Shown here: positions 18,001 to 48,000 of the stretch, piece after piece
Position numbering within the stretch: position 1 is the first letter of the stretch
How the letters are laid out: each line of letters starts with the position of its first letter
DNA from: Botryllus schlosseri
Taxonomy: Eukaryota
DNA: 64,000 nucleotides
Direction of reading: 5' to 3'
Assembly (NCBI GenBank): GCA_051294905.1
Contig: CM119379.1
Location: 16,616,001-16,680,000 of the forward strand
Position numbers and translations under genes: made by a program
Notes under the pieces: model-generated
Databases searched by the model: none
Seen by the model: the letters and a program-made list of their open reading frames with translations, nothing else
Told to the model about the DNA's origin: nothing

Positions 18001-21000
18001 CTTGAAAGCCAATGTTGATTTCGAACCAGAGTTTTCAAATTCAACGATGTCTGCCCGCCAAAATCCGAAAAACTCTATTTGCCCGAGTCATTCGTTATTT
18101 ACCGTATTGATTTTATATTTAGTGCATTGTGTATACAAATTAACAACAACAATTCATACTCTCCGTAATTAATGTCACTTAATTTCCATCAACATGCTTG
18201 TAATCTGATGCTAAGCAAGTTCATTCATAGTTTACAATAGATGCAACTCGTGTGTGATGTCACTATGACGTTCGCGTGTGCCTTGCCGTCTGCGCATAAC
18301 AGTTTGTCCCGTGTGCAAGCACTTTATAGTCCTTCTGCTACTGTATTAATAGCATTACAAAGCCGCAGGGTATGATTGATTCTTCACTTTGACATACTCA
18401 TAAGTCGATTGTCCTCGCCTTTACACGGTAGTCATTTATGACTAATACTCTATTTCGCACGCTATCGTATGTATGAGCTTGGGTCGCTGGGTGATATCAC
18501 GAATTGTCGGCTGCGTGTATTAGCCGCTCCGCCACGTTTTCCGATGTGATACGTCGCTTCGTTTTGGATATTTCTTTTGTTTTACCATTGCAATTTAATA
18601 GTTTACACATGTACGGAAAGGATTAAGCCTGTAATTTTACGTTTGATGCTTCCGACACCTCATATTTTGTCATCAAAATTGACTTGCCTGCAAACGCGTG
18701 ATGATGAATAACAAGTCTTCAAATCACATCTATCATTCGATCCATCAGATGTAAAGAGTGTACGCATAATTTCTTTACGTATATACCTTCCGCCCATAGG
18801 TTATTTCGCGCGATTTAGGTTAAACACTGTGTCTTCACCCTGTAATCATACCTCACAAGTTCATGGGAACATCTCAACTACAGGATATAAGTGTGGTCTA
18901 CTTGATTATAAGGAAGCGTCGCCTTATCATCTTCTATTCGGCGGCAATTTTCCGTGTCGGCGGTCGACTCGCGATTTTGACGTACGGCGGTATTGTTGCG
19001 GGAGAATGGGTAGCGGAGATATTACGACTAGTTCCGCTAATGTCGGCGGAAAAGATTCCTCAGCTGTGATGATGATAGTGAAAGTCGGGGAAAACGAATC
19101 AAATTCAGGTTGATCTAAAAATGGTTCCACCACCCACCAATTTCTCGGAGCTCCTACGTAACCGAACTCTTAATTAGATGTCTGCAAGCGATAAGTTGTA
19201 AATAAACATCCACCCGTATTGCCGGAGTGGAGAATCACACAACGCGACTGATCTATAAAGCCCACATGCCTCCAATGCACCGCAGAAACGCGCAGTGGAA
19301 GGCAGCTCGCTTTCATCCAGTCGTACATAATATTTATGGTTCATGCGTTCAGTTAATCGCGGGATTGGTAACAATTCATGCATCGTATTCTTATGATGAC
19401 AAATCTCTGTGACTGGTCGATTGTACATTTTCGGATGGGAAGCGAATTGCCAATCATGTGTCATGAATCATACGCAGTCCTTTTCGACCCAAAAAACATA
19501 CAGAAATCGCCATGCGCGATTCGTCAATTCGGATGATTACACGAATGTCAAGGTCAGAGATTCTCAACTGCGCGCGCGCAGATGTACTCGAAGGGAATCC
19601 AATCAGCGCTGTATCTATTTTGCGTGTCACGGTTATCCAATTTCAGCGAAAATCCCTCTTTAATCCGTAATCCGCTAGATCCAATTGCATCCTTCTTATC
19701 ACTTTCCCTTCCTCGATTTAGCATTTCCGGAGGGAACAGCCGGGGCTGGTTTCTCATCGACAAAAGCACGGGCTTAATCACGACCACGTCATCGCTACAT
19801 TTCGAACAGACCGCCGCCAACGGCACCGTGACCCTTGACATCGTCGCGAAAGACGAAACCAAAAAAGCCCTGTCCGACGAGGCGACACTCGTAATTAGGA
19901 TACGAGACGAAAATGATAACGCGCCCGTTTTTGCGATGCCGAGATACTATTTCAACGTCACGGAAAACCGGGTGAACGCAATAGGCGAAATCATAGCCAC
20001 GGATGACGATTACGGAGTAAACGGCGACGTATTTTACGGCATGGAATCCTGTCAATGTATCGGCGATGTACACATGACTCGAGACACTGAGCCCTTTGAA
20101 ATACGGGCCGACGGATTAATCAAAACTACCGCGCCTTTGGATCGTGAATTTTGCGCGGAGTACAGCGTGCAAGCTTGGGCTACCGACTCAGGATCACCGC
20201 CTCTCAAAACTACAGTCGAAATCCTCGTCAAGGTGATAGATGTCAACGATAATCCGCCTGTTACGTACCCGTCCAGATATTTTACGGTTATTAAGCCGGG
20301 CACTCCGGTAGGCGAGGTTGTGGATCACGTCAGCGCGAGCGATTTGGACATTTCCGATCTAAACAGGCTGACTTACAGTATGGCATCGACCAGTAGGTTT
20401 TTTCGCGTGGCTGAAAATACAGGGGCCTTGTCGCTATCGCGAAGCGTGGCCGGCCTAAACGGGGCGAACCACACGCTCGAAATTGTCGCCAGGGACTTGA
20501 GTGGGCAGGTTTCAAACACTGCTTTCGTAACGGTGCTGATCAGAACCGCCGTCAACACTGCCGCGTCGTTTACGAAGGCCGCTTACGAGTATTACATACA
20601 GGAAGATGAAGGCGATGGATATTCTGTCGGAGTTGTGGAGTTGGAAAATCTATTTGGAGTGGACGCCACGTTCTATGTTACAGAAGGAAACCCCGACTCT
20701 GCGTTTAGAATTGACGACTTCAACGGCATGTTGTACGTCGAAAATTCCACTATGTTAGATGCGGAAATATCGACGGTTAGAAATTTGACAATCGTGGCTG
20801 AACTGCGGGACGCAAGCACCCACAATGGAGTAGGGTATATCACGACGCGATGCACGGTGCGCATTGTCGACGTGAACGACAATTTCCCGTATTTTGTGTC
20901 TCTGCCGCAAACCGCGTCTAAATCGGGCGATAATTCGTACGAAGACGCGGTCTCTGTAATCCTAAGCGGCAATTTCGAAAGGAAGTTCATCTACAACGCC

Positions 21001-24000
21001 AAAGCTGACGACGATGACGTCACGTCACGTGATCGCGATGTAATATATGAAGTGCGATCTTCGTTTCCCGGGTTTGAAATCGATCCGACTACCGGAGTAT
21101 TGTATCACACACTCGTACATGCACTGGATGGCGGACACAATAACTTGACGACACAGCTCGAAATCTCAGCTTGTGACATGATGGGAATTCAGAAATGTGC
21201 CAAACTCCTTCTCGGAGTTACCCTCGTTTTGGTTGACAATATCATTTCGCAGCCCGCGGAAAATATTTACACTGCCTTACCGGAAAGCGCCCCGGTGGGA
21301 TCTCCAATCGGACTTGTTCCCGAATTGAGTGGTCTAGCCGACTCATTTGCGGTCAGCCACGACTTAATTTCTGACACTCCGTTCCGCGTTTACCCGCGAG
21401 GCGAAATTATAATATCCGATGAGTCGGATTATGAAAAATTAACTGGCTATCAACTGGCCGTTACCACGAATGTAAAAACGCACGACAAAGAATACCGGAA
21501 GCGATCGTGGCTAACTATGGCGGTGGAAGATGTTAACGATAATTCCCCGACTCCCACGCAAAGTGAATTCCAATTCGCGATAAAAGAATCCGCCCTACCC
21601 GGCGATCACGTGGGTACGGTCCGCGCTTATGACCTAGACAGCGGAATTCACGGTGCTGTGGTGTACGAAATACCGAAAATGGCCAACAGATACGAGACGG
21701 ATCTGTTTTACTGTGACGCTTTCACGGGTGATATCTACCTGACGCAAAGACCAGACAGAAATCTTCTACAGCTGCTCAATTTACGATCTGGTGAAATTGA
21801 CCTTAACATCGTCGCGTCGGATCAAAACGGAGTGAACTCCACCTTGTCCGAAGTGCGAAAATCAGTGTTGACGGCGCAAATATCGATGCAATTCGATAAC
21901 AGATATCCCATGTACTTCAAAACGAATACTTACTACGTCGAAGTCATGGAAAACCTTCACATTTCCGATATAATCACAGTACAAACGATGGACATGGACG
22001 AGTTGTGGGTAACGAATCCACCGATGGTACATTACGGACTACAAGTCGCCGGTACCGGCGAAGAACCTGAATCTTTCCGAATCGGGAAAGACACCGGAAT
22101 CGTAGGAATGAGAAACAGCGTACAACTCGACAGGGAAGAATCTGAATTCCATCATCTCATCGTACGGGCCAAATACGCCGACGGCACAGAGGAAGCGACC
22201 TCGAACTTATACATCAGAGTCCTAGACGAGAAAGACGCACCGCCCGTGTTTACAGCGGACAGCTACCGATTCCAAATACGAGAGAAGTCACTTACGCGAG
22301 CTCCGATTGGACGAGTCGAAGCACGTGACGGTGACGTCACAACAGAAAGAACGAGGATCTCGTATCGGTTCAATTCCGAGACGAGAGAAAGGTTCGAGAT
22401 TGACGAAAACAGCGGGTTCCTGTTTCTGTCGCGGCCTTTAGATTACTCGGAAGGGTCTGAGTATAACTTGATAATAGCCGCGATAGACGAGTCCGGTGCG
22501 GAATCCGAGGTGTCGGTTGTGATAAACGTTGAAAAAACAACCCAAGCAATCCCGCGAATCGTTTACAACGCGTTTAAAAACTTGAAAGAAGGGTATTACA
22601 GTGACGGCACTATAGTAGCCACTCCTGGGATCGCAGAATCTTACACCGGCACCCCGTTAACGTACTCAATAATCAGTCCTTCGGGTATACAGCGATCCGG
22701 AATGCCTTCCTATCATATTAACTCTGTAACGGGAGCGATTACAGTGACCGGTACAGTGGATCGTGAAGTGTCTGACCAATTAAAATTGACAGTCCGAGTC
22801 TCGGACGGCACGTCACAATTTAACGACATCCCAGTCGATGTGAAAGTCAACGATGTCAACGACAACGCGCCATTTTTCACGAGCCCGTCGTCCTACAAAT
22901 TTCGGCTGGAGTCAGCGTCTCGGGCCGGTGAGGCGATTGGAAGGGTGGTTGCTCGCGATAAAGATACGGGTCGCAACGGGCTTGTGTCGGTAAGCTTAGC
23001 TAATCCGGCGGACAGTAAATTTATGCTGGACGGAGACGGGTATCTTCTGGTGCGGTCGCCGTTGGATGTGACTACCGTGCTGCATGCCGTGGACATAATA
23101 GCCACGGATAAAGGTAAGTGCTATTTTGTTACGATCGTAGTCACCCAAAAGCATTTTTGATCTCGTGGTCTTCCATATATTATAGTCTAGCCGCCAATAT
23201 AGTGATAGATATAGCTTTTGGTTTGGTACTTCAGCAGTTTCGAGTGCGAAACTTGCTTTACACACATATTTATATGTGCGATAGTAATGAACATTTATTG
23301 ATAAAAGTACCCGACATTTATTCATACCATTTTATGCTGGTGATGGTAAAAATTAAAATATTCAAATATCCGAGTACAAAACTTACATTTAGCGACAAAC
23401 AGTATGTTTTATTGCCAATTTTGTTCCACTCTAAACTTTTCGACTTATTCTCATCAGGAGAAAACGTCAGCAAATGTGGTTAATGAAAACACTAATTATA
23501 GAAAAATGTTTGTCACTGCGGCGTAATCTTGACAAGTAAATAGACTCGCGAACTGTGCGTTGTTCTGTGGCGTTCGATAGTCTGTTTACTTATCATTGTA
23601 AAGTCGCAGCGAAAAAATTCCTAATATATTTGTAATTTGGTTAACCGTATTTACTGACGTTGGTCGTGATAACAGTCAGCCGAAAGGCTATAAGTGGAAT
23701 TACTTTGGCAATTAGAACATAATGTTTGTAGCGATATTAAAATATTCATTCACATTGTAACCATGTGGTATGCAGTATACGATTTGCAGTCGTTCTTGTA
23801 AAGCACGCGACTGCTGCATTTGTTATTCCCAATCACACATAACGTGGTTGACAATGCACGCGACAAGTTCTTAAAAGTATCAATAAGACCACTACATCTC
23901 ACATTTCCTATCCATATCTTCGACACACATAAAACAAAACATTATCAGGACCTTCAACATAGCATTTTTGCTACTTTTGTCCCTATTATTCAGTATTATT

Positions 24001-36000: not shown

Positions 36001-39000
36001 TTAATTGTCGGCGTCAATGGAGTAATGTTTGTCACCTGCACTCTGGCAAATAGGCGTACATTGTACTCAAGGTGACACAAGGAGCTGCTTTCGCTTCTCC
36101 CGGTACTTGAGTGGCACTCGACCGAGTGTAAGCTATCCCCGCCCATTTACCATGTATATTGGATATGCGCGAGAAATATATGCGTTGAGGACTGATGATA
36201 GCTTTCGATCTAAAGTTTGGAATCTAACAGTGAGGGATAGTTGTATATCCCATCTGGGAATAGAAATTGTATAACAACAGGTATGCTTTCTCACTTTCGC
36301 TTTACTGAACCAAATTTTAGACAGATCATTGCTTTACGTTACAAGCCACCCCTGCGCGCATTTCCAAGCCCCTTATTGCACCTGAATCGCTAGTCACGCG
36401 AAAGACGAACCGGCAAAACTTTTAAGAATTTCCAACGAAATGGATACGGTATAAACATCGTATACACGCGGAGCTGTCACCGTATAATAACAAGCCTCTA
36501 GGCCAGCCATTATGCACTTTCCACCATATTTTTAAATATGATGTAACTGTAAACGGACGTTAAATTTCCAGTATACTGTAATCCATTTTGATATCAGAAT
36601 CAAATCGGTGATTGCGCGCTCCCGTTTTGATAGATCGGAAGATAGGCTATTAAGAAGCGGTGAGATATATAAATTTAATAACAGCGCAGCGGTCTCTAGC
36701 ATAGTGTTTTTCAACGTGAATGGCACTCGCTGGTAGAACGCCTTGCATAATAAATGGTCAAAATATTGCTATGGATCTATTCTCTCATATTATCTCTCTT
36801 GAAATTCAAGATTTATGTGATCATACATCATGCCGTATTATTATAAAAGTAATGCTGATTAATAACGAGGAACGTAGCTGGCAATACAGGGCTATTCGAT
36901 GAACGAGCGAGCGTATATTCCATGCAGTTGGAAAAAGTAACGAGATTTAGCCTGTGTATTGTGGAGTTTTGATGGGTTATACCACTTTCGACTGTATTTA
37001 ATTTGGATTATTAGCACGTTATTGTGCTTTCTAGAAAAGAGTTTGTGTGAATTGTGGGAATTTTAGCTTCCGACGCCGTTTAAACGTGATCACGCGAATA
37101 ATGCTCCCTCTTAATACGGATGAGCGTTAAAACTTGTCAATCGCCGTTTCCAAACGTGACGACCATCGAACGCGTACTTTTCGCGCAAAATTCGTATATT
37201 AAGCACAACCGAAACGCTAACGCCCCCCCCCCCCACGTCGGACCACTCTGCATAATTTTTAATCAAATCACAATATATCCGCACCTGCACCACTATTTAT
37301 ATTCGCGTTGACACCGAATAACTATCCGAGTCCGATTGAAAGGGAGATGAATATATATATAGTATATATATATACAGACAGAGAAAGATACTTTATTTGG
37401 TATTTACATTTACAGCATCAACATAGAATATAGAAGAAAGCGCAATTAAACCCGAAACACCGACATACCATGCGCTAATTCGCACTGATCTAGAGATGAG
37501 AACGAACGTGAACGTATATCAATATACAACATGCACATTTGCACAATGTACAGCGATTATCTGGACAGCGAAATAATCACAGATGAACGACATGCACAGC
37601 TTATCAAAAGCGCAGTTCCCTCTAGACGGGCTTCGGAAACCCCGGAAACAAGTATAGCTTTTTGCCGTTAAACGAATCGCTGCTTTCCACGGTCGCCGTG
37701 CACTCGTGATACTTCGGCATCTTCGTGGGCATGTTCGACAGTTTCTCGCCCACCTCCCGACTGACGTGCTCCATGATCTCCACCACGTGACAGTCTTTCG
37801 CGCGCTTCTTGAACTGATTCGCGATGGCGGTGATGAACCAGCCGCGAAATGAAATGTGGTCTGGCTGGCACGCGAAAGCCAGCATTAGGTCTGCCCCCAT
37901 GCCTGTGTATTCGAACGCGGTCGCGTCGCTTTCAACGCTGTCCGACTCGATCGTGCTTCTTCTGGGTGTGTTGTAGTTGTAACGCGGCGGAGCTCTGTGT
38001 GTTTTTTTCGCAGGTTTTATGATACTATTGAGTAAGCTTCTCAGCCACGCGCTGTCCGATTGTGGTTCTATAAAGCCAACCGCGTCTGACTCCACCGCGC
38101 CCCTTCCCGGTGATTTAACAGACGTGTACTTCTTGGCCTGTTTGCCTCTGCACATCTGGAAAAATAGCATTTTAGGCTTCCCATTCAACACCGGACACCG
38201 CGTCACTTCCGACACAATCTCCGTGACGTTGGTTTTCGTATTCATATCATCGCCCAGTATAAAGTCGTCCTTCTCTCCGTGCGACATCACTATGATCGCG
38301 CATACGGCAGCACGCTTCATTGCCGGCGAGTTTACGAAATCCGCCACAGTTTGCTTCATGGCTTCTGCGGTCAAGTCACCTACAAACTCAACGGCGAAGC
38401 CTAACGACTGCCAGAGTACGACCATTTTCTTCGCGTCTTCCTGACTGCCGTTACGCTTTAGTTTCTGGTCCTTAAATTCGTTGTTCATGATCAAGATACG
38501 GCCTTTTGGATGTCCCCTAATCGGGTACACGTCGTTCGCGTTATTTTTGCTCACGTAATCCTCGTAGTCGCAATCCTCGACTTGTGCGTCGATCTCGTCT
38601 TCAACACTTGCTGATTTCCCGAGCTTGACAGGCATCTCGTTCAACTCTTTCGAATGCGTCGTTCGAGTATCTTCCGCGGGCAGCGTGATGTTGAAATGGA
38701 CGGGCCCGTAAAATATCGGATTCCCGCTAAAAGTGGACGCCATCGCCTCCGCGCGAGGACTTTGGTTTTCACTCATTTTCGATCAGTATCTTTTACCGTT
38801 ACTTTGAATAATTTAATGCAATCTAGAGAGGTTCTTATGATTGGTAAGCTTTGTCGGTAATTGCTGGAAAAGCACTACTGACCTTCCAGTTTTTACGCGA
38901 CTGCCTTCTCGGATTGAAGCCGCATGTGACTTGATAGAATCTAAACGGGGCGCGGGGCTTTAAAGCCCATATACTTCCTTAAAAAGCCTGACGTATTCAT

Positions 39001-42000
39001 CGTCATAAGTCAAGCCCGACAAGGAAATTCTCGCTCTCGTTTTCTTAAGTTTACACACGCCTGTCAATTCTGTAACAGTCACTGAAAATCCGTCGTTGAG
39101 ATATGTTAATGCAGCACTGCGATATGTTTACCATTAATACATGACGTTTCGTGAAGTCACATCCGCAACGCTGGCATGGCAGTGTCTACTATTCAATGCT
39201 CGCAAGCCGTGATCAATCCTTCGCGTGACTACTGCTGGACTTTGTCTTTTCTCAAATTCAACATGGAGTCAACTGAACTGTACAATCGAAATTCATCTTC
39301 TGTGATACAGAATACGAGTACCGTATGTCCGTATCCGGGTCTGGTCACTACGGCAAGTTTTTGTTGCAGTCAAACCCGTGAAAAGTTGCACTTACTTTTA
39401 CCAAAGTTGCAGTAAAAAGTTGCATTTATTTTTCACAAAGATTGCACTAGAAAGTTGCATTTAAGGACAAGTTCCTTGAAATTATTAGGGTATGGGATAC
39501 TCGAATCGATCCGTATTCAAGGCACTGTAGCAAACTCGGTGTTGGCGACTTCAACAAAATCAATAGCCTGAAAAAACTGACCCATCGGAAATATAATTTT
39601 CGGCAGTCCGGCCTGAATTGACGTCAAATCAGAAAGGACCTCAAATTTAAACGACAGCGAAATAAGCAAGCGATCTATTTACATATAGGGCCAAATATTT
39701 CCAGTAAAAAGTAGGTTGCATGAAAAATGGAAAAAAGAAATGCAAAAAGTTGCATGAAAAAATGGAGAAAAGTTGCGATATAAGATTCCTCTAGACAGCT
39801 TAAAACACCATACATAACTTCTGAGTAATTAGGAAGCTGCCGGAAGCTGTAAAAAAAAGTTGGAAAAGTTGCAAAAACTTGCCCTACTGATCACCTTGAT
39901 TTGATTATGTCGATCCTTGTGTTGATTTTGAAAACTGCGGCAATGCCGAATACTATGGATTATTGTCATTAATCGCTTTGAATGTCCTATTTCTTCATTT
40001 TCTTTTCTTGGAGCTGCTATATACTTATATATATAGGCGTACTATTACCATATTTTTAAATATGATATAACTGCAAACGTATGTTCGATTTCCAGTATAA
40101 TCCGTTGTGTTAAACTGAATCAAATCGGTGATTGCGTGCTCGCGTTTTGATAGATCGGAAGATAGGCTATTAAGAAGCGGTGAGATATATAAATCTAATA
40201 ACAGCGCGTCGGTCTCTAGCATAGTGTTTTTCAACGTTCGTTGCGCGCGCTGGTAGAACGACTTGCATTACGTATATTAATCACCATCGAAACGCTAACT
40301 CCCCCCACGTCGATGGACTGGGCAGTAGACACGGGACCAAGCACGACTACAGGGCATACCTCGAAAATTTTACCTCGTGACTTTCCCATTATTAAAATTT
40401 TCGTGACTAATTGTGTTGCGTTCATTTTAGCGTGTGCAAACTGCGAATAAGGTTTTGCTTCTGAGGCAGGGTGCAGCTCATATCCGGACGTGACGCCGCA
40501 CCGGGTGGGATTGTCTTTGATTATATTTCGGACTTGCCCACTTGCGACGCCGCACCACCCTGCATAATTTTTTAATCACGTCACAATATATCCGCGCCTG
40601 CACCACTAATTTTATTCGCGTTGAGACCGTATATATATATCTCAATCCCATCAAAAGGGAGTTGAAGACAGAGAAATATACTTTATTTGGTATTTACATT
40701 TACAGCGTTGACATAGAATAAAACAAAGCGCAATTAAACCTGAAACACCAACAGACCAAGCGCTAATTCGCTTATATCTGGAGATGAGAGTAAAAGTATG
40801 CTATCAAGTACAACATGCACAATATACAGCGAAATAATCATAGGTGGACGACATGTATTGTATAGCTTATCACCAGCGCAGTTCCCACTACACGGGCTTC
40901 GGAAACCCTGGGAACAAGTACAGCTTCTTGCCGCTAAACGAATCGCTACTCTCCACGGTCGCCGTGCACTCGTGATACTGCGGCTTCTTCGTGGCCATGT
41001 TCGACAGTTGCTCGCCCACCTCCCGACGAACGTGCTCCATGATCTCCAACACGTCACAGTCTTTCGCGCGCTTCTTGAACTGATTCGCGATGGCGCTGAT
41101 GAACCAGCTGCCTTCCTTGTTTCGGAAAGAAACGTGGTCCGGCTGGCACGCGAAAGCCACCATTAGGTCTGCCTCCATGTCTGTGTATTCGAACGCACTT
41201 GCGTCGCTTTCAACGCTGTCCGACTCGATCGTGCTTCTTCTGGGTGTGTTGTAACGCGGCGGGGCACCGTGTTCTTTTTTCGTAGGTTTTATGATGCTTT
41301 TGAGTAAGCTTCTCAGCCACTCGCTGTCCGATTTGGGTTCTGTAAAGCCAATCGCGTCTGACTCAACCGCGCCCCTTCCCGGTGATTTAACAGGCGTGTA
41401 CTTCTGTGCCTTTTTGCCTCTGCACATCTGGAAAAATATCATTTTAGGTTTCCCCACCAACACCTCAGACTGCTTCACTGCCGACACGATCTCGCTGACG
41501 TTGGTTTTCGTTTTCATATCATCGCCCAGTATAAAGTCGTCCTTCTCTCCGTGTGACATCACTATGATCGCGCATACGTCAGCACGCTTCATTGCGGGCG
41601 AGTTTACGAAATCCACCACAGTTTGCTTCATACCTTTTGCGGTCAGGTCGCCTACAAACTCGACGGCGAAGCCTAGCGACTGCCAGAGTACGACCATTTT
41701 CTTCGCGTCTTCCTGACTGCCGTTACGCTTTTGTCTGTGGTCCTTAAATTCGTTGTTCATGATCAAGATACGGCCTTTTGGATGTCCCCTAATCGGGTAC
41801 ACGCCTTTCGCGTTTTTTTTGCTCACGTAATCCTCGTAGGCGCAATCCTCGACTTGTGCGTCGATCTCGTCTTCAACACTTGCTGACTTCTCGAGCTTGA
41901 CAGGCATCTCGTCCAACTCTTTCGAATGCGTCGTTCGCGTATCTTCCGCAGGCAGCGTGATGTTGAAATGGACGGGCCCGTAAAATATCGGATTCCCGCT

Positions 42001-45000
42001 AAAAGTGGACGCCATCGCCTCCGCACGAAGACTTTGGTTGTCACACATTTTCGATCAGTATCTTTTACTGCTACTTTGGATAATTTAATGCAATCTAGAA
42101 AAGTTCTTATGACTGGTTAGCTTTTTTGGTAGTTGCTGGAAAAGCTCTCCTGGCCTCCCTTCTTAGATTCGAACCGCTGACGAGTGACGGCCCGTCACTG
42201 ACGGGGCGCGGGGTTAAAGGCTGTTTACTTCCGCAAAAAGCCTGACGCATTGACAATAAGTCAAGCACAAGGAAATTCCTGCGCTCGTTTTTCTTGAGTT
42301 TGCACACGCCTGTCAAGTGTCAACTCTGTAACATTTACTGAAATATGTCGCATGTCGCTGTTAATATGGTAATGATTAATGTTACATGACGTTTCGCGAA
42401 GTCACATCCGGAACGCTGACATGGCAGTTTCTGTTGTAGCATGCAAGCTGTGTTCAATACTTAGCGTGACTACTGCTGAACTTTGTCTTGTCTCAAATTC
42501 AACATGCAGTCAGCTGTATTATGATAGCTCGTACGCTTGACGGTTGCTATACCGATATTCCACACTTCATCGATTTCCCGTCGACCGCTCGCCACCGGTC
42601 CTGATATTCTGACAACTGAATTCAATTCAACTTATTGTAAACAATTTCATCATTTTAATATACCACAAGACTGCGATACAATGGAAGAAAGGAAGGTGTC
42701 AATAGAAATAAATGACGCTCTGACATCGATGATGCGTTGTAACGCGCCAAGTGGAAAATTTGCTCTCAACAACGTGTCGTTATTTTGCTAGTGAGGTTGC
42801 GGGTGAATGAATGTCGTCATCTCGCGACCGAAAGTCATTTGTACCGACTACCGAGTCACAAACTATGATGAAGTGACTACTCTGCATCGAATGTGCATTA
42901 TAAGCTCGGATCAGGCCAATACCATGAGTACCAATTCCTATGTTTATTCCATCACAAATGGCAGCATTTTGGTCCGATACAAATTGATATCTTATCGAGG
43001 TGACTGGAGTCGCGAGACTACTGTGTATCATTATGCATTCAAGTATAAAATATAATCAAATATAGTCAAATGTATGTAAATTCGGTTTCGTCTTCGTATT
43101 TTAGATAACAGTTGAGGTCAGCGACGAAAACAACAACCCACCCGAGTTTCCGGAAGGCTTGGCCCGTGCCAGCGTGTCCGAATCGAAACCGCCCGGTACC
43201 AAAGTGACCACGGTCAAGGCGACCGACCTGGACTCCGGCGATGTCTTGACTTATTCACTGAGCTCCAAATCAGGAGACTTGGGATCGGACTTCGTCATCG
43301 ACCCTGTCGAAGCTGTCGTATCCGTCGGACCCTCTGGAGTTGACCGAGAGAGAAAATCTCAATATCTACTTGAAGGTAGGAGATATTTTCAAACATACTA
43401 GATAAAACGATTGTATCTTCTCCCTCAAGAGAATTTTCGAATTGATTTATAGTAGGTTAATTACTATCATTTCAGTGGTTCTTGACCTTACCAACCCTTT
43501 CGATACTCCGACGAACCCAAATATTTGTACAGTCACAAAAGCAAACGCAGTACAAATCAAATACGTTACTATAGAATATTGGTGCACTCTGCACAAGGTG
43601 TACTGTGCGTCAAAAGCATCGTTAAAGAACAAAACCACTGAGACATCATACAACCAAATGATTATAATGAATATTTACCAGTTAAAACCACTGTATTCCA
43701 TTAAATAAATACCCTCTTTTCCTAATACCAACATGACAATGGTTATATTCTGATAAATATCACAGAAAATGTTTGATATTTATCAATATCAGTTATTATT
43801 ATTACCTTGAATTGTGGTGTAAGCCCACCCCAGTACTTGAGTTATGTTGGGAAATGGTGGCCAGTGTTAAGTGCAGCGAGTTGTGACGTCACATTGCGCA
43901 TTTGTGGTAGATTCAATGTCCAAATGCCAGGTTTGAATTACTATCACAGGATTAATATAAATGAGACTTCTTATCGTTTTAAGTCACTGCCGATGACGGG
44001 ACGCACCGGTCCACCATGGAATTGCAGATAGACATCGAAGACGTTAACGACGAGGCGCCGCAATTTACGTCCACCCCTATCTGCTTTGATTTGTCGGAAA
44101 ACTCTCCGTACGGCACCGTCGTGGGGCACTTAGAGACAGAAGACCGGGACCAGGATTCCTATGTTGAATATTCGATCATTGGCGATAATGGTAGGTTTCA
44201 TGCACCACTTTATCTTAAGCCTTTACCACATCTACTCTACATTGGCAATAACCTATCAACTTCGAATTCTGATATCAGTTTGGCTCCACAAAAATCACTG
44301 AATGGGTACTTTTAATAATATAATTATTCTGTATCTGTATCTCGAAAATCCGATAGCTGTTTTTGAACGATTTATCATTACGTCTTGATATTCTAAATGA
44401 ATATCTGGATACATTGTGCCATATTGCTGCTTGCGTATCACATATCGCACTTTCTGTTTGTGATTTGAGTCATGCTATTGTTTAGCGCTTGTGGCTAAAT
44501 TTAACGCCTTGACTCGTTTGATTAATCACAGACTGATACCGATTGTTTTGCTTCTTATGTATTGAAACGTGTCGCTTTTATGTTTCAGAAATGCACACGA
44601 ATTTTACAATCCACGCTAATCACGGAACCATACGGTATACCGGAACAGGTGGACTGGATAGGGAATTACAAGATTTGCACATTTTACAAGTTCGAGCAAT
44701 CGATCAAGGCGGTATGTGACAGAATTCCTACAACGCCTCACGGTATCTGTTGGATATTCATTTGAGCGTATTGTCTCTCAGTAGAAATCGAAGAGAATCT
44801 TCAATTTATGTACGTGAATTGTGTTGTCATGATTTGAGCTGGATGAAATAGTACGCTCTGTTTGTAGGACATTTACACCCTGATTGAAGTTATATTTTTG
44901 TGAATAGGTTTAACGGCATTTCCACGTTACATAAACCATCACTTCTCATGCTGAGTTCTAAAGGATTTTACCCCATGTCCTACCCCGTGTCACTTCAGTC

Positions 45001-48000
45001 TGCGGTATATTTTATGCATTTTATAAATGATTGCAAAAATTAGGTTTCTTAATAACTGACCCCAACCTTATTTCACGAATTCTACTACCAGACCTCAGTT
45101 GAAGTCTAAATGAGAACATTGCTTGATACCTCCAAATTTTGGTCCCCTGACTGGTCTGCACTTCTACAATAACTCATCTACAGCAGCAATTATCCTGACT
45201 CACATTAACACGGTGTACTGTCGAAAAGAAAATTAAAAATGCTGACTACCCGGTCAGTATTATTATTGTTTTATATAACATCAATCTTTTTGCTTCACAA
45301 TCCATTACTGACAGGAGAAAATGATCATGCCCAATTTGGCTTTTCAATCATCAAAGCTTCAATCATGATATGCCGGTGATTACTCGAGATTATATGGTTA
45401 TGATTATAATTTGATGATAACAGGGAATATCATCTGAATTAACCATCGTACTTGATTTATCTGTGAAACCACATCGTCTTTGGTGTGGGTGTGGGTTATT
45501 TCCTATTAGCTTTTGCATAAGTTATCTGTCAATTCAATGCTGAATGTTTTACAGGCTTGCACTCCATCGCCCGTGTGTACATTTATATCACCGACGAAAA
45601 TGACCACCAACCTATGCTGCACGTGCAGGGCCATGACATTATCGAAATATCAGAAGAGTCCCACATTGACTCGGTCGTTGCTAGGGTGCATGGGACTGAT
45701 CTCGACCTTGGTGAGGGTACTTCTTTTGTTGGTTTGATGTGAACTAGTCAGTGGTGTGCTCCACAAGTCTGGGGTTTGGATTATGACGAAGCCAAAAATG
45801 TATTCTAACTCTGACTAGATCTTGCACATCTATTATAGTGAAGTATCAGCAGCATTGAGATGTGTGATGGCCACTCTCTTTGTTTCGTCTAGTCTGGCAC
45901 TTTGCGATGTTGATTCATCAGTAAATATTCCTTCCCCCTTTGATACAACATCTAACACATCTTAGAGGGCATCTGAAAAATGCTGGTCAGCGATGCTTTA
46001 CATATTACTCATACTGTGAACTTTGTGACATAGTTGGCGATGCGCAATGACTTTTGCGTGCATTGTGATGATTGAATTTGCCTCGTGTGCTATGATGAAA
46101 TAATAATAGGAACCAACAATCGAGATGTCACTGGTGCCCCCTTAATTAACGAGTTTAAATACTTTTTTTACTGTCCCGACCATAGCGGTGTTGAAAACGC
46201 ATGTACAGCTAACACGCGACTTAATGGACCACAAAGTTTTCACAACTGACAATATACTGTTAAACCACGAGGAAATAGACACAAACTATTGACCTTATGA
46301 TATCTTGAAGGCATTGTTTGCGCGTGACTCCACACCACTCGGTGCATAAATTCAGTACTTGAAAAATGGATTCAATATCCTGGTATGATTCAACAAATGC
46401 TAATATTGCTGTAAATTTAGAAAGAAATTGCGCCTATGAAGCGTTTTATGAAACTAATGTTTTCCACATCTCATTTTTAGGCGACAACCAAGAAATTTAC
46501 TACAGCATTGTTAGCGGTAATCCCTACGGTCACTTCCGCATCGGCACCTTTTCCGGACTGGTCCATGTTAACTCTAAGTTGGACCGGGAAACCATCGGCC
46601 AGTACCGTTTGACCATCATGGGCAGGAACAAATTTGCCGGTCTCGGGTTCGAGCAATTCTCCAATCTCACTCTTGATATCAGTCTTCTGGATGAGAACGA
46701 CAACACGCCATATTTCACAACTCCCTTAATCACGTAAGTATCACATTGGTAACATTACAATCACATAACTCCTAAGACTTTGCCTACCAACATGTGCCAC
46801 CTCATTTTCATGGCATGTACTTATATGTTATCGTCTATTCCTTTTCATTCAACTTGCATACATGGTATATACCTGTTCTAGGCCGAGGTAGGTGTCTGAT
46901 TGAAATGTTACTCCAAGTCGTTTCAACACTCTCCTCTGTTTTCATTATATCTCAATCTTGTGTTGTTTTGAAATGATGAAAATATCAATAAAATGAATGA
47001 AAATTGCCGGTTGGGGAAAAGCTGTTGGGTATTAATTACCATCTAGTAACCGATAATTGAGAATTATTTTGTGATCGGATTATTAATTTACTGAAGCTTA
47101 GATATATATATCGCTCAAGTTTGATGCAATTCTTGATAATTATCGCACAAAGCATATTATGATTCCGGTACAATGATCAGTTTTGACATGTTTACATTCT
47201 AAAATTCATGGAAATTTTCTAGATACCTTCCAGAAAATGCTCCTGTGGGACACACGGTGGTCGATATCAAAGCTGTCGACCCCGACGAGGAATTGGACGG
47301 GGTGGTCTCCTATCGCCTGTTAAGTCAATCGCCCAACGACGGAACCTTCTCTCTCGATTCCCAATCGGGACTGTTAACCGTTTCGGACAATAGGAATCTC
47401 GATTTCGAAACTACCACACAATATAATTTGACAATCGAAGCCAAGGATGGAGGTAAGTTCACTTTGACAACAGGTGATTGAATTACAAAGCTTCAACTTG
47501 TTGAAGACTCAGTCAATAGCATGGAAAATCTATGCAAACAGTACACTCAAGTACCTTACCACTGTTTCGTCCATTACGTGAAGTAGTTTCAGTGAAGTGA
47601 TAAGAACTTATTCTTCAACAGACTTTAAAATCAAAGAATTCAACTTTTGGATTTGTCAATTAGTTTAATTTAGTGCGTATCAATTTCTTCGTGATAATAA
47701 ATCACAGCAGTAAAAATGAGACGGCACTGTTGCAACTTTTGTTTGACCTTCACACAGATCTATTGACCCACGCTTATTTGAAAAAAAATAATTGCTAATA
47801 ATTGCCTTCATAATTGCTAAACAAATACCATTACCCACTGTTATATGTATAATTTCCGCTGTATTTTCTTCAGCGTGTAGATTCGTAGAACTCCACCCGG
47901 GGAAAAATGTTATCATCAGTGTTTATTTATTCAGGCTATCCTGCATCGACTTCGAAAGGAAAAATTGAGGTACGCATAGTCGACGCTAACGATAACCGGC

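What the first reader, a model, noticed from the sequence alone, without database searches (positions are those of the whole stretch)
38681..38737. Caspase prodomain is an invariant short motif resembling a cryptic RHIM amyloid-signalling motif instead of CARD/DED (also 41953-42009)
Seen: neither caspase has a death-fold prodomain. Residues 8-45 are identical in both copies despite three synonymous changes (CGC/CGT, CCC/CCT, ACT/ACG), while the rest differs at about 50 positions. The core STFSGNPIFYGPVHFNITL is beta-prone with alternating hydrophobics and glycines. Known: Drosophila PGRP-LC/LA/LE and Imd signal through cryptic RHIM amyloids; from memory PGRP-LC has a core like TFGDKHFYEGPVTIQ. 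Inference: these caspases may be recruited and dimerised by amyloid templating rather than death-domain assembly. That would be an amyloid-activated caspase module, which I do not know to be described in chordates. No partner with the motif was found in this window.
Basis: partly seen in the sequence, partly recalled or inferred. Interest (0 to 1): 0.78.

Follow-up and report, generated by a model that had tools for sequence, protein, structure and literature searches.

The report
Conserved N-terminal tag on caspases
Two neighbouring cell-death protease (caspase) genes, and eleven relatives elsewhere in this genome, start with the same short conserved peptide where such enzymes normally carry a folded recruitment domain; the peptide is real and under selection, but it is not a recognisable RHIM and nothing yet shows that it forms amyloid.

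Summary
Window 37622-38776 and 40888-42048 (minus strand) encode two expressed caspases, 85% identical. Neither has a death-fold domain.

That identical run alone is not significant (P about 0.1). The motif matters because it is family-wide. Thirteen caspase loci in this genome (seven intact) and two orthologues from other assemblies begin with phi-x-phi-S-G-G-x-P-x-F-x-G-P-[IV]-T-I-N-[VI]-Y. It is an island of conservation in an otherwise variable, predicted-disordered prodomain, followed by a conserved caspase-type cleavage site. The mRNA carries a spliced leader, the first AUG lies upstream of the motif, and an in-frame stop rules out a hidden upstream domain.

The RHIM reading is not supported:
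- The motif lacks the (I/V)Q(I/V/L/C)G tetrad.
- No member matches Pfam RHIM or HET-s models, or the sequence of any solved chain.
- No non-caspase gene in the genome carries it.

Most likely it is a lineage-specific recruitment or clustering tag that replaced the CARD of a CED-3/caspase-2-like caspase. Amyloid-type templating remains possible (about 0.2) but is untested. Other notes of this scan report different short tags on NLR and ZU5-UPA genes of this same genome.

The parts
40888..42048 (-). Caspase gene B, single coding exon, 386 aa (stop codon included)
   Evidence: ORF. Peptidase_C14, E 1e-41. RNA-seq covers the gene up to ~42095 and a poly(A) tail is read at ~40662.
37622..38776 (-). 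Caspase gene A, single coding exon, 384 aa, tandem copy 3.27 kb from B
   Evidence: ORF. Peptidase_C14, E 2e-34. 85% identical to B. Tandem repeat spacing 3266-3288 nt. RNA coverage is lower than for B.
41953..42009 (-). Conserved N-terminal motif of B, residues 14-32 (STFSGNPIFYGPVHFNITL)
   Evidence: Aligned with orthologues and paralogues. Mean column identity is 0.56, against 0.24 and 0.34 in the flanking prodomain and 0.64 in the catalytic subunits.
38681..38737 (-). Conserved N-terminal motif of A, residues 14-32, identical in DNA to B
41857..41871 (-). D-E-I-D|A (residues 60-64 of B): inferred prodomain cleavage site
   Evidence: DE[IL]D-A is invariant in the four orthologues. Paralogues have xE(S/C)D at the matching place. 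That it is cleaved is an inference.
38585..38599 (-). D-E-I-D|A (residues 60-64 of A)
   Evidence: Same as for B.
41416..41430 (-). Active-site pentapeptide QMCRG (residues 207-211 of B); the catalytic His is in SHG at residues 165-167
   Evidence: Invariant columns Q207, C209, R210, G211, S165, H166 and G167 across nine family members.
42049..42096 (-). 5' UTR of B and its 3' splice (trans-splice) acceptor, ttttctAG|ATTGC
   Evidence: Six RNA-seq reads continue beyond 42096 into an 18-nt leader that is absent from the window and then into adapter. The 17-mer of that leader occurs 717 times in the genome, against 5 for the control.
42055..42057 (-). In-frame TGA three codons upstream of the ATG of B
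   Evidence: Sequence. The open frame is 388 codons for a 386-aa ORF. There is no ATG in the 46-nt UTR, so M1 is the first AUG.
40662..40662 (-). Poly(A) addition site of B (3' UTR about 226 nt)
   Evidence: Loose ends made of T runs before 40662 in five reads.
19582..23160 (+). Cadherin-repeat exon of the host gene on the opposite strand (left flank)
   Evidence: Pfam Cadherin, 8 stretches, E 5.5e-87, plus Cadherin_FAT4_N.
46366..46737 (+). Cadherin-repeat exon of the host gene (right flank)
   Evidence: Pfam Cadherin, E 2.5e-13.

Best explanation
The motif is the conserved N-terminal tag of a lineage-specific, expanded family of caspases encoded on a single exon. Their catalytic domain is of the CED-3/caspase-2 (CARD-caspase) type, but the CARD has been replaced by a ~20-residue peptide: phi-x-phi-S-G-G-x-P-x-F-x-G-P-[IV]-T-I-N-[VI]-Y.

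The peptide sits at the very start of a 35-65-residue prodomain that is predicted to be disordered. The prodomain ends in a caspase-type cleavage site, DE[IL]D|A here and xE(S/C)D| in the paralogues.

I read the tag as the handle by which the zymogen is recruited and concentrated, giving activation by induced proximity. The prodomain would then be cut off, and the (V/I)ESD sites in the inter-subunit linker processed. The likeliest binding mode is a docking peptide, perhaps a beta-strand addition, that binds a folded domain of an adaptor not yet identified.

It is not a member of the RHIM family.

Shown: the conservation, the position, transcription, the start codon, the absence of a death fold, and restriction of the motif to caspases. 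Inferred: recruitment, cleavage and the binding mode.
For: - Only Peptidase_C14 is found.
- The nearest solved catalytic domains are CED-3 (1e-27) and caspase-2 (2e-21). The nearest outside homologue, P0003, is a CARD-caspase.
- The motif is present at the N-terminus of 13 caspase loci in the genome, 7 of them intact, and of 2 orthologues from other assemblies.
- It is an island of conservation: 0.56, against 0.24 and 0.34 in the flanks. Many synonymous differences show selection on the peptide, not on the DNA.
- Residues 1-62 have pLDDT <50 and no secondary structure in the AF2 model.
- An acidic cleavage site is conserved after the motif.
- Both genes are transcribed. B carries a spliced leader and a poly(A) tail, its first AUG is M1, and there is an in-frame stop upstream.
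- The motif profile finds no other gene class in the genome.
Against: - No partner has been identified, so the docking model has no positive evidence of its own.
- Twenty conserved residues is long for a linear docking motif. It is the typical length of amyloid signalling motifs.
- The AF2 alignment was shallow (9 sequences), so the 'disordered' call is soft.
- The peptide could instead regulate the enzyme in cis.
- Cleavage at DE[IL]D has not been shown.
Confidence: 0.5

Rival explanations
1. Amyloid-type (RHIM-like in function, not in family) signalling motif. The tag folds into a beta-arch and stacks with tags of other molecules, either the same or paralogous caspases or a sensor with a diverged tag. 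This nucleates a fibril that concentrates the protease domains and activates them.
For: - The length (~20 aa), the strand-turn-strand-turn-strand pattern (phi-x-phi / GG.P / F / GP / ITINVY) and the conserved G and N are typical of amyloid signalling motifs.
- The tag sits where a homotypic death-fold domain is expected.
- A whole-library profile search found the nearest sequence look-alikes to be single rungs of repeat proteins: DUF285 repeats in P0007 and the repeats of P0004. Their beta-solenoid and fibre-like character is my own reading, not a tool result.
- Earlier notes of this scan report other short tags instead of death folds on many NLR, ZU5-UPA and RNase-like genes of this genome.
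- Amyloid signalling motifs are known to escape profile methods (PMC8086366).
Against: - There is no RHIM tetrad and no Pfam RHIM, HET-s or sigma hit.
- A profile search of all PDB chain sequences returned only two rhamnosidase-family chains.
- Two nearly invariant prolines lie inside the core.
- No sensor or adaptor carries the tag: profiles A2, A4 and A6 and two patterns hit only caspases.
- The look-alike hits are sums of weak repeat matches, not homology.
- Self-assembly was not predicted. That job gave no answer and counts neither way.
Confidence: 0.2
2. Cis-regulatory N-peptide. The tag keeps the zymogen inactive, sets its stability (a degron) or directs it to a compartment, as the short N-peptides of executioner caspases do. 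It does not recruit the enzyme to a platform.
For: - The prodomain is short, disordered and removable.
- The N-terminal position is strictly kept, 0-13 residues from Met1.
- No partner was found in the genome.
Against: - The AF2 model does not dock the peptide onto the catalytic domain.
- The catalytic domain is closest to initiator-type CARD caspases, which need recruitment.
- The motif matches no known degron or targeting signal that I can name.
Confidence: 0.2
3. No function. The identity of the two copies reflects recent duplication or gene conversion, and the resemblance to RHIM is chance.
For: - A run of 38 or more identical residues is expected in ~10% of random placements.
- There are no synonymous differences inside the 57-nt core.
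Against: The motif is kept in orthologues at 45-52% identity and in paralogues at ~35-40% identity, with saturated synonymous divergence and variable flanks.
Confidence: 0.03

Closest known systems
CED-3 / caspase-2 type CARD caspases (Peptidase_C14)
   Same: The catalytic domain is the same: His in SHG, Cys in Q-x-C-R-G, the R-x-G-S..D and S-F-R...G-S-W-F substrate-binding elements, and Asp-specific processing sites in the linker. The best solved matches are CED-3 and caspase-2.
   Different: There is no CARD or any other death-fold domain. The prodomain is a ~20-residue conserved peptide in a disordered stretch of 35-65 residues. The pentapeptide is QMCRG or QICRG. The coding sequence is a single exon, and the family is expanded to 13 loci.
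RHIM of RIPK1/RIPK3/TRIF/ZBP1 (PF12721) and insect cRHIM (PGRP-LC/LE, Imd)
   Same: It is a short, non-globular, beta-prone motif of about 20 residues with conserved Gly and Asn. It stands at a place usually held by a death-fold interaction domain, as Kajava et al. described for invertebrate RHIM proteins (PMC4262963).
   Different: There is no (I/V)Q(I/V/L/C)G tetrad, no profile match, and two conserved prolines in the core. The motif sits on a protease rather than a kinase, receptor or adaptor, and no partner carries it. Kajava et al. state that tunicates appear to lack RHIMs (PMC4262963). A Pfam RHIM scan of this genome gave only non-coding chance hits.
Fungal and bacterial NLR-associated amyloid signalling motifs (HET-s, sigma, PP, BASS)
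   Same: The architectural logic is similar: a short tag at the end of a cell-death effector takes the place of a folded adaptor domain. The genome has a large NLR repertoire.
   Different: In those systems the same motif sits on the NLR N-terminus and on the effector, often in neighbouring genes. Here no NLR or any other gene carries the caspase tag, and the neighbours are cadherin exons. There is no Pfam match.
Short N-peptides of executioner caspases (caspase-3, -6, -7)
   Same: The prodomain is short, unstructured and removed at an Asp site.
   Different: Here the peptide is longer and holds a strongly conserved 20-residue motif shared by a whole paralogous family. The catalytic domain is nearer to initiator-type caspases.

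Membership tests
RHIM (PF12721) | Core tetrad (I/V)-Q-(I/V/L/C)-G (PMC9444067) | tested here: not met
   None of the sequences read (window A and B, P0001, P0002, 11 paralogous loci) has it. The matching place reads IFYG, IFNG, VFNA, IFQG, SFQG, TFQG, TFKG, IFHG or VFHG.
RHIM (PF12721) | Match to the family profile | tested here: not met
   hmmscan found no RHIM hit for the full proteins at E<=1 or for nine N-termini at E<=10. HMMER's filters may drop very weak matches.
RHIM (PF12721) | Sequence likeness to a solved RHIM or HET-s amyloid core | tested here: not met
   The motif profile, searched against all PDB chain sequences at E<=10, returned only two rhamnosidase-family chains.
RHIM (PF12721) | Homotypic: the same motif on the interacting partners | tested here: not met
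   Three profiles and two patterns found the motif only at caspase N-termini in the own genome. It is shared among caspase paralogues, so caspase-caspase pairing is not excluded.
RHIM (PF12721) | Forms cross-beta amyloid that is needed for signalling | not testable with these tools
   The complex prediction with four copies gave no answer. ThT, EM and SDD-AGE assays are needed.
Insect cRHIM | VxxG core in which only the fourth Gly is invariant (PMC10268257, PMC13506858) | tested here: inconclusive
   A phi-F-x-G tetrad can be read in 14 of the 15 sequences, and P0002 has Ala at the Gly place. The definition is too loose to discriminate.
Insect cRHIM | [quoted passage not shown] | not tested
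No tool gave me these sequences, the key papers are not held and a text search found none.
Caspase (Peptidase_C14) | Pfam match and catalytic His/Cys dyad | tested here: met
   PF00656, E 1e-41 and 2e-34. SHG and QMCRG are invariant across the family.
Initiator caspases with a death-fold prodomain | CARD or DED in the prodomain | tested here: not met
   No Pfam death-fold hit. Residues 1-62 are unstructured in the AF2 model. An in-frame stop and a spliced leader exclude an upstream coding exon.
Fungal/bacterial NLR amyloid signalling motifs | Motif present on both an NLR end and an effector end | tested here: not met
   The genome has >=94 NACHT hits, but the motif profiles hit none of them. 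The NLR tag exons themselves could not be fetched.

The most novel reading that the evidence does not exclude
In this SL-trans-splicing chordate (sea-squirt-like), death-fold adaptors have been widely replaced by short peptide tags. The caspase tag would be one of them: a beta-arch unit that activates a whole family of CED-3-like caspases by templated, amyloid-like polymerisation. That would be an animal counterpart of fungal and bacterial NLR amyloid signalling, and the first amyloid-activated caspase.
Probability: 0.15. Interest if true: 0.85.

Novelty: new variant of a known kind. Interest (0 to 1): 0.5.

Why it matters
Caspases are thought to be activated either through death-fold prodomains (CARD, DED) or by cleavage. 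Here a whole expanded family of initiator-like caspases has a conserved 20-residue peptide instead. I found no description of this in the papers I could search.

Finding what binds the tag would reveal a recruitment route for caspases that does not use the death fold. If the tag self-templates, it would extend amyloid signalling to direct protease activation in a chordate.

It also fits a wider pattern noted elsewhere in this genome, where short tags take the place of death folds on NLR and ZU5-UPA genes. That pattern could be studied as one system.

Tried and rejected
- **Pfam RHIM (PF12721) scan of the own genome.** It gave only three sub-threshold hits, all in non-coding frames. It therefore yielded no native RHIM to compare with.
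- **First motif profile (A2, orthologue group only).** It was too narrow and missed the paralogues in the own genome. The single whole-library job run with it is likewise blind to the paralogue-type motif. Its non-caspase hits are repeat proteins that score by summing weak matches, or a dubious gene call: P0004 (no Pfam family), DUF285 repeats in P0007, Ig V-set repeats in P0006, and P0008.
- **Strict pattern search.** The third hit, on C2, is a non-coding tandem repeat.
- **Pattern F.G[PA][IV]TIN.** It gave six extra hits, at the level of the control. They are what look like beta-sandwich (Ig-like) exons and a dispersed repeat.
- **Complex prediction with four copies of the tag.** No answer (score 0.02). 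This is no evidence either way.
- **ESM Atlas search with the tag.** No usable hit.
- **The search for homologous proteins.** The full length and the family profile found only P0001-P0003. The tag region of a paralogue found nothing. Records of this genome and near ones appear to be withheld, so the phyletic range is unknown.
- **NLR tag exons reported by earlier notes.** The 1.1 kb I already held upstream of 30 NACHT exons shows no shared tag.
- **Insect cRHIM papers and the amphioxus TICAM paper.** They are not held.
- **My early assumption that the genome is amphioxus.** I dropped it after the spliced-leader evidence.
- **IAP-binding motif, LIR and TRAF-binding readings of the peptide.** I considered these by eye and rejected them, because the needed residues are not conserved across the family.
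Full report
**What is there**

The two places given lie on the minus strand, near the start of two open reading frames: A at 37622-38776 (384 aa) and B at 40888-42048 (386 aa). Both match only the caspase domain Peptidase_C14, at about residues 92-360 (E 2e-34 and 1e-41). Neither shows a CARD, DED or Death domain. They are tandem copies 3.27 kb apart and 85% identical in protein.

They sit between cadherin-repeat exons of a large gene on the plus strand, at 19582-23160 and 46366-46737. An orthologue from another assembly (P0002) also has a cadherin gene on the opposite strand 2 kb away, so the arrangement is old.

**Check of the observation**

- Residues 8-45 are identical, and the only codon differences there are CGC/CGT, CCC/CCT and ACT/ACG.
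- The rest of the protein has 51 substitutions, 6 indel columns and 27 more synonymous differences.

However, a run of 38 or more identical residues arises in about 10% of random placements of the 57 differences, and the next longest run is 31. The 57-nt core also holds no synonymous change. The pair alone therefore does not show selection on the motif.

**The motif is family-wide**

Two more distant homologues, P0001 (52% identical) and P0002 (45%), keep F-x-G-[NS]-P-[IV]-F-x-[GA]-P-V-x-F-N at the same place.

A search of the window's own genome (495 Mb) with the catalytic domain found many paralogues, the nearest ones each in a single open frame. Reading their N-termini showed the same motif in a second form: M-E-x(2-4)-I-x-I-S-G-G-x-P-x-F-Q-G-P-I-T-I-N-V-Y. 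A third form is M-D-K-x-S-[VI]-x-L-S-G-S-A-V-F-H-G-D-V-N-L-H-F-H.

A profile of nine such N-termini (A4) finds 13 places in the genome at E<0.01. Every one is the start of a caspase gene or of a broken caspase gene. Seven are intact and six are disrupted or fragmentary.

Within the family the motif is an island of conservation. Its mean column identity is 0.56, against 0.24 before it, 0.34 after it, 0.36 in the inter-subunit linker and 0.64 in the catalytic subunits.

The paralogues use different codons for the same residues: TTC/TTT, CCC/CCA/CCT, ATT/ATA and ACC/ACG/ACT. Over 21 pairs the 19-codon block shows 89 synonymous-only and 233 amino-acid-changing codon differences. The next 19 codons show 27 and 358. 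So the peptide, not the DNA, is under purifying selection.

**Gene structure and translation**

Public RNA data cover both genes, B more deeply.
- B has a poly(A) tail at about 40662.
- At its 5' end, six reads leave the genome at 42096, at a ttttctAG acceptor. They continue into an 18-nt sequence that is absent from the window and then into adapter.
- The 17-mer of that leader occurs 717 times across the genome, against 5 for the reversed control.

I read this as spliced-leader trans-splicing. Among chordates that is known only from tunicates (my knowledge), and earlier notes of this scan independently call the genome sea-squirt-like.

The 46-nt UTR between the acceptor and the ATG has no ATG and holds an in-frame TGA at 42055-42057. 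No upstream exon can therefore add a death-fold domain. M1 is the first AUG and the motif is translated.

**Anatomy of the protein**

The catalytic residues are intact: SHG, QMCRG, R-x-G-S..D and S-F-R...G-S-W-F. The nearest solved relatives are CED-3 (1e-27) and caspase-2 (2e-21), ahead of caspases 7, 3 and 1. The nearest outside homologue in the protein library is a CARD-caspase. The catalytic domain is thus of the CARD-caspase type, with the CARD gone.

After the motif comes a variable stretch and then a conserved acidic site. This is D-E-[IL]-D|A in the orthologue group and xE(S/C)D in the paralogues. The inter-subunit linker holds several (V/I)-E-S-D sites. These are inferred cleavage sites.

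An AlphaFold2 model built on the nine-sequence alignment gives a confident caspase core. Residues 1-62 have pLDDT below 50 and no secondary structure, and they do not dock on the core.

**Is it a RHIM?**

The defining tetrad (I/V)-Q-(I/V/L/C)-G (PMC9444067) is absent from all 15 sequences.
- Pfam finds no RHIM, HET-s or sigma match for the full proteins or for nine isolated N-termini at E<=10.
- The motif profile, searched against all PDB chain sequences, finds only two rhamnosidase-family chains at E 0.45 and 1.2.
- Two prolines are nearly invariant inside the core, which is unusual for RHIM cores (my knowledge).

Kajava et al. report that tunicates appear to lack RHIMs (PMC4262963). A Pfam RHIM scan of this genome gave only non-coding chance hits.

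The insect cRHIM is defined as VxxG with only the Gly invariant (PMC10268257, PMC13506858). A phi-F-x-G can be read here in 14 of the 15 sequences, but a definition that loose cannot discriminate.

I note as an unchecked lead that the paralogue form F-[QH]-G-P-[IV]-T-I-N resembles it more than the window form does.

**Is there a partner?**

Three profiles (A2, A4, A6) and two back-translated patterns were run over the genome in six frames.
- Significant hits are caspase N-termini only.
- The extra pattern hits are at control level. They are a non-coding repeat, a dispersed repeat and two exons that look like beta-sandwich domains.

The genome has a large NLR repertoire, with at least 94 NACHT hits. 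Earlier notes of this scan say that many NLR, ZU5-UPA and RNase-like genes of this genome carry other short tags in place of death folds.

The 1.1 kb I held upstream of 30 NACHT exons shows none. With 150 or more copies reported, though, tags similar to the caspase tag should have surfaced in the profile searches, and none did.

**Other searches**

The one whole-library profile job used the narrow profile A2. Its only caspase hit was P0001. The other six hits were repeat proteins whose units each weakly resemble the motif, or a dubious gene call:
- DUF285 repeats, F-x-G-C-S-x-F-N-Q-P-V-x-F-N-T-S;
- the repeats of P0004 (no Pfam family), P-S-F-S-G-N-M-V-V-N-G-P-V-E-F-K-S-S;
- Ig V-set strands.

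These scores are sums of weak matches and are not evidence of homology. At most they show that the motif looks like one rung of a beta-rich repeat.

The Atlas search, the last word-based search and the four-copy complex prediction gave nothing usable.

**Verdict**

The RHIM/cRHIM filing is not supported.

The best reading (0.5) is a lineage-specific recruitment or clustering tag in a disordered, cleavable prodomain that replaced the CARD of a CED-3/caspase-2-like caspase. It most likely docks to a partner that is still unknown.

An amyloid-like, self-templating mode remains open (0.2), as does a purely cis-regulatory role (0.2). Chance or gene conversion is essentially excluded (0.03).

I found no paper describing such a caspase prodomain. 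I therefore class it as a new variant of a known kind, of moderate interest until a partner or an assembly mode is shown.

Noticed in passing
window 42049-42096 (minus strand), and genome-wide: The mRNA of caspase B carries an ~18-nt 5' leader that is not encoded nearby (...TATTTGGTTGTATTAAG). That 17-mer occurs 717 times dispersed over the genome, against 5 for the control. This looks like spliced-leader trans-splicing and points to a tunicate.
   Followed up: partly
window 19582-23160 and 46366-46737 (+), with the caspases at 37622-42048 (-): The caspase pair lies antisense between cadherin-repeat exons of a Fat-like gene. The orthologue P0002 in another assembly also has a cadherin gene on the opposite strand 2 kb away, so the nesting is conserved.
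   Followed up: partly
window 37835-37860 (copy A, around residues 308-313): Copy A lacks four residues (SFR----GWF against SFRNKEGSWF) right after the conserved substrate-binding Arg. It also has two extra residues (YN) in the linker. Its activity or specificity may differ from that of B.
   Followed up: no
window 37622-38776 against 40888-42048: The two copies differ at 51 amino-acid-changing codons and 30 synonymous-only codons. That is a crude dN/dS near 0.5, which suggests relaxed or diversifying selection outside the motif and the catalytic core.
   Followed up: partly
window 41704: Four of 21 RNA-seq reads in run X23 lack 2 bases here, inside the coding sequence of B. This may be a frameshifting allele in another individual, or an artefact.
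   Followed up: no
window 39400-39900: The stretch between the two caspase genes has very high contig depth in one transcriptome-like run (545-1238, against 10-150 on the genes), with many loose ends. It is probably a dispersed, transcribed repeat.
   Followed up: no
window 41857-41871 and 38585-38599: Cleavage at the conserved DE[IL]D|A site would expose a new N-terminus A-[QN]-V-E in the orthologue group, faintly like an IAP-binding motif. The paralogues lack the Ala.
   Followed up: no
G000 C4:14.32-14.40 Mb, C7:13.84-13.89 Mb, C1:25.88 Mb: Six of the 13 tag-bearing caspase loci are broken by frameshifts, stops or separated pieces. Several lie in clusters, so the family is turning over by birth and death.
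   Followed up: partly
G000 genome-wide: At least 94 NACHT-domain hits were scored, out of 224 candidates. Most lie in single ~500-codon open frames with a conserved pre-P-loop segment (…LIK.VN..T…EDF..E.LHEPDF.V[FY]PQM…).
   Followed up: no
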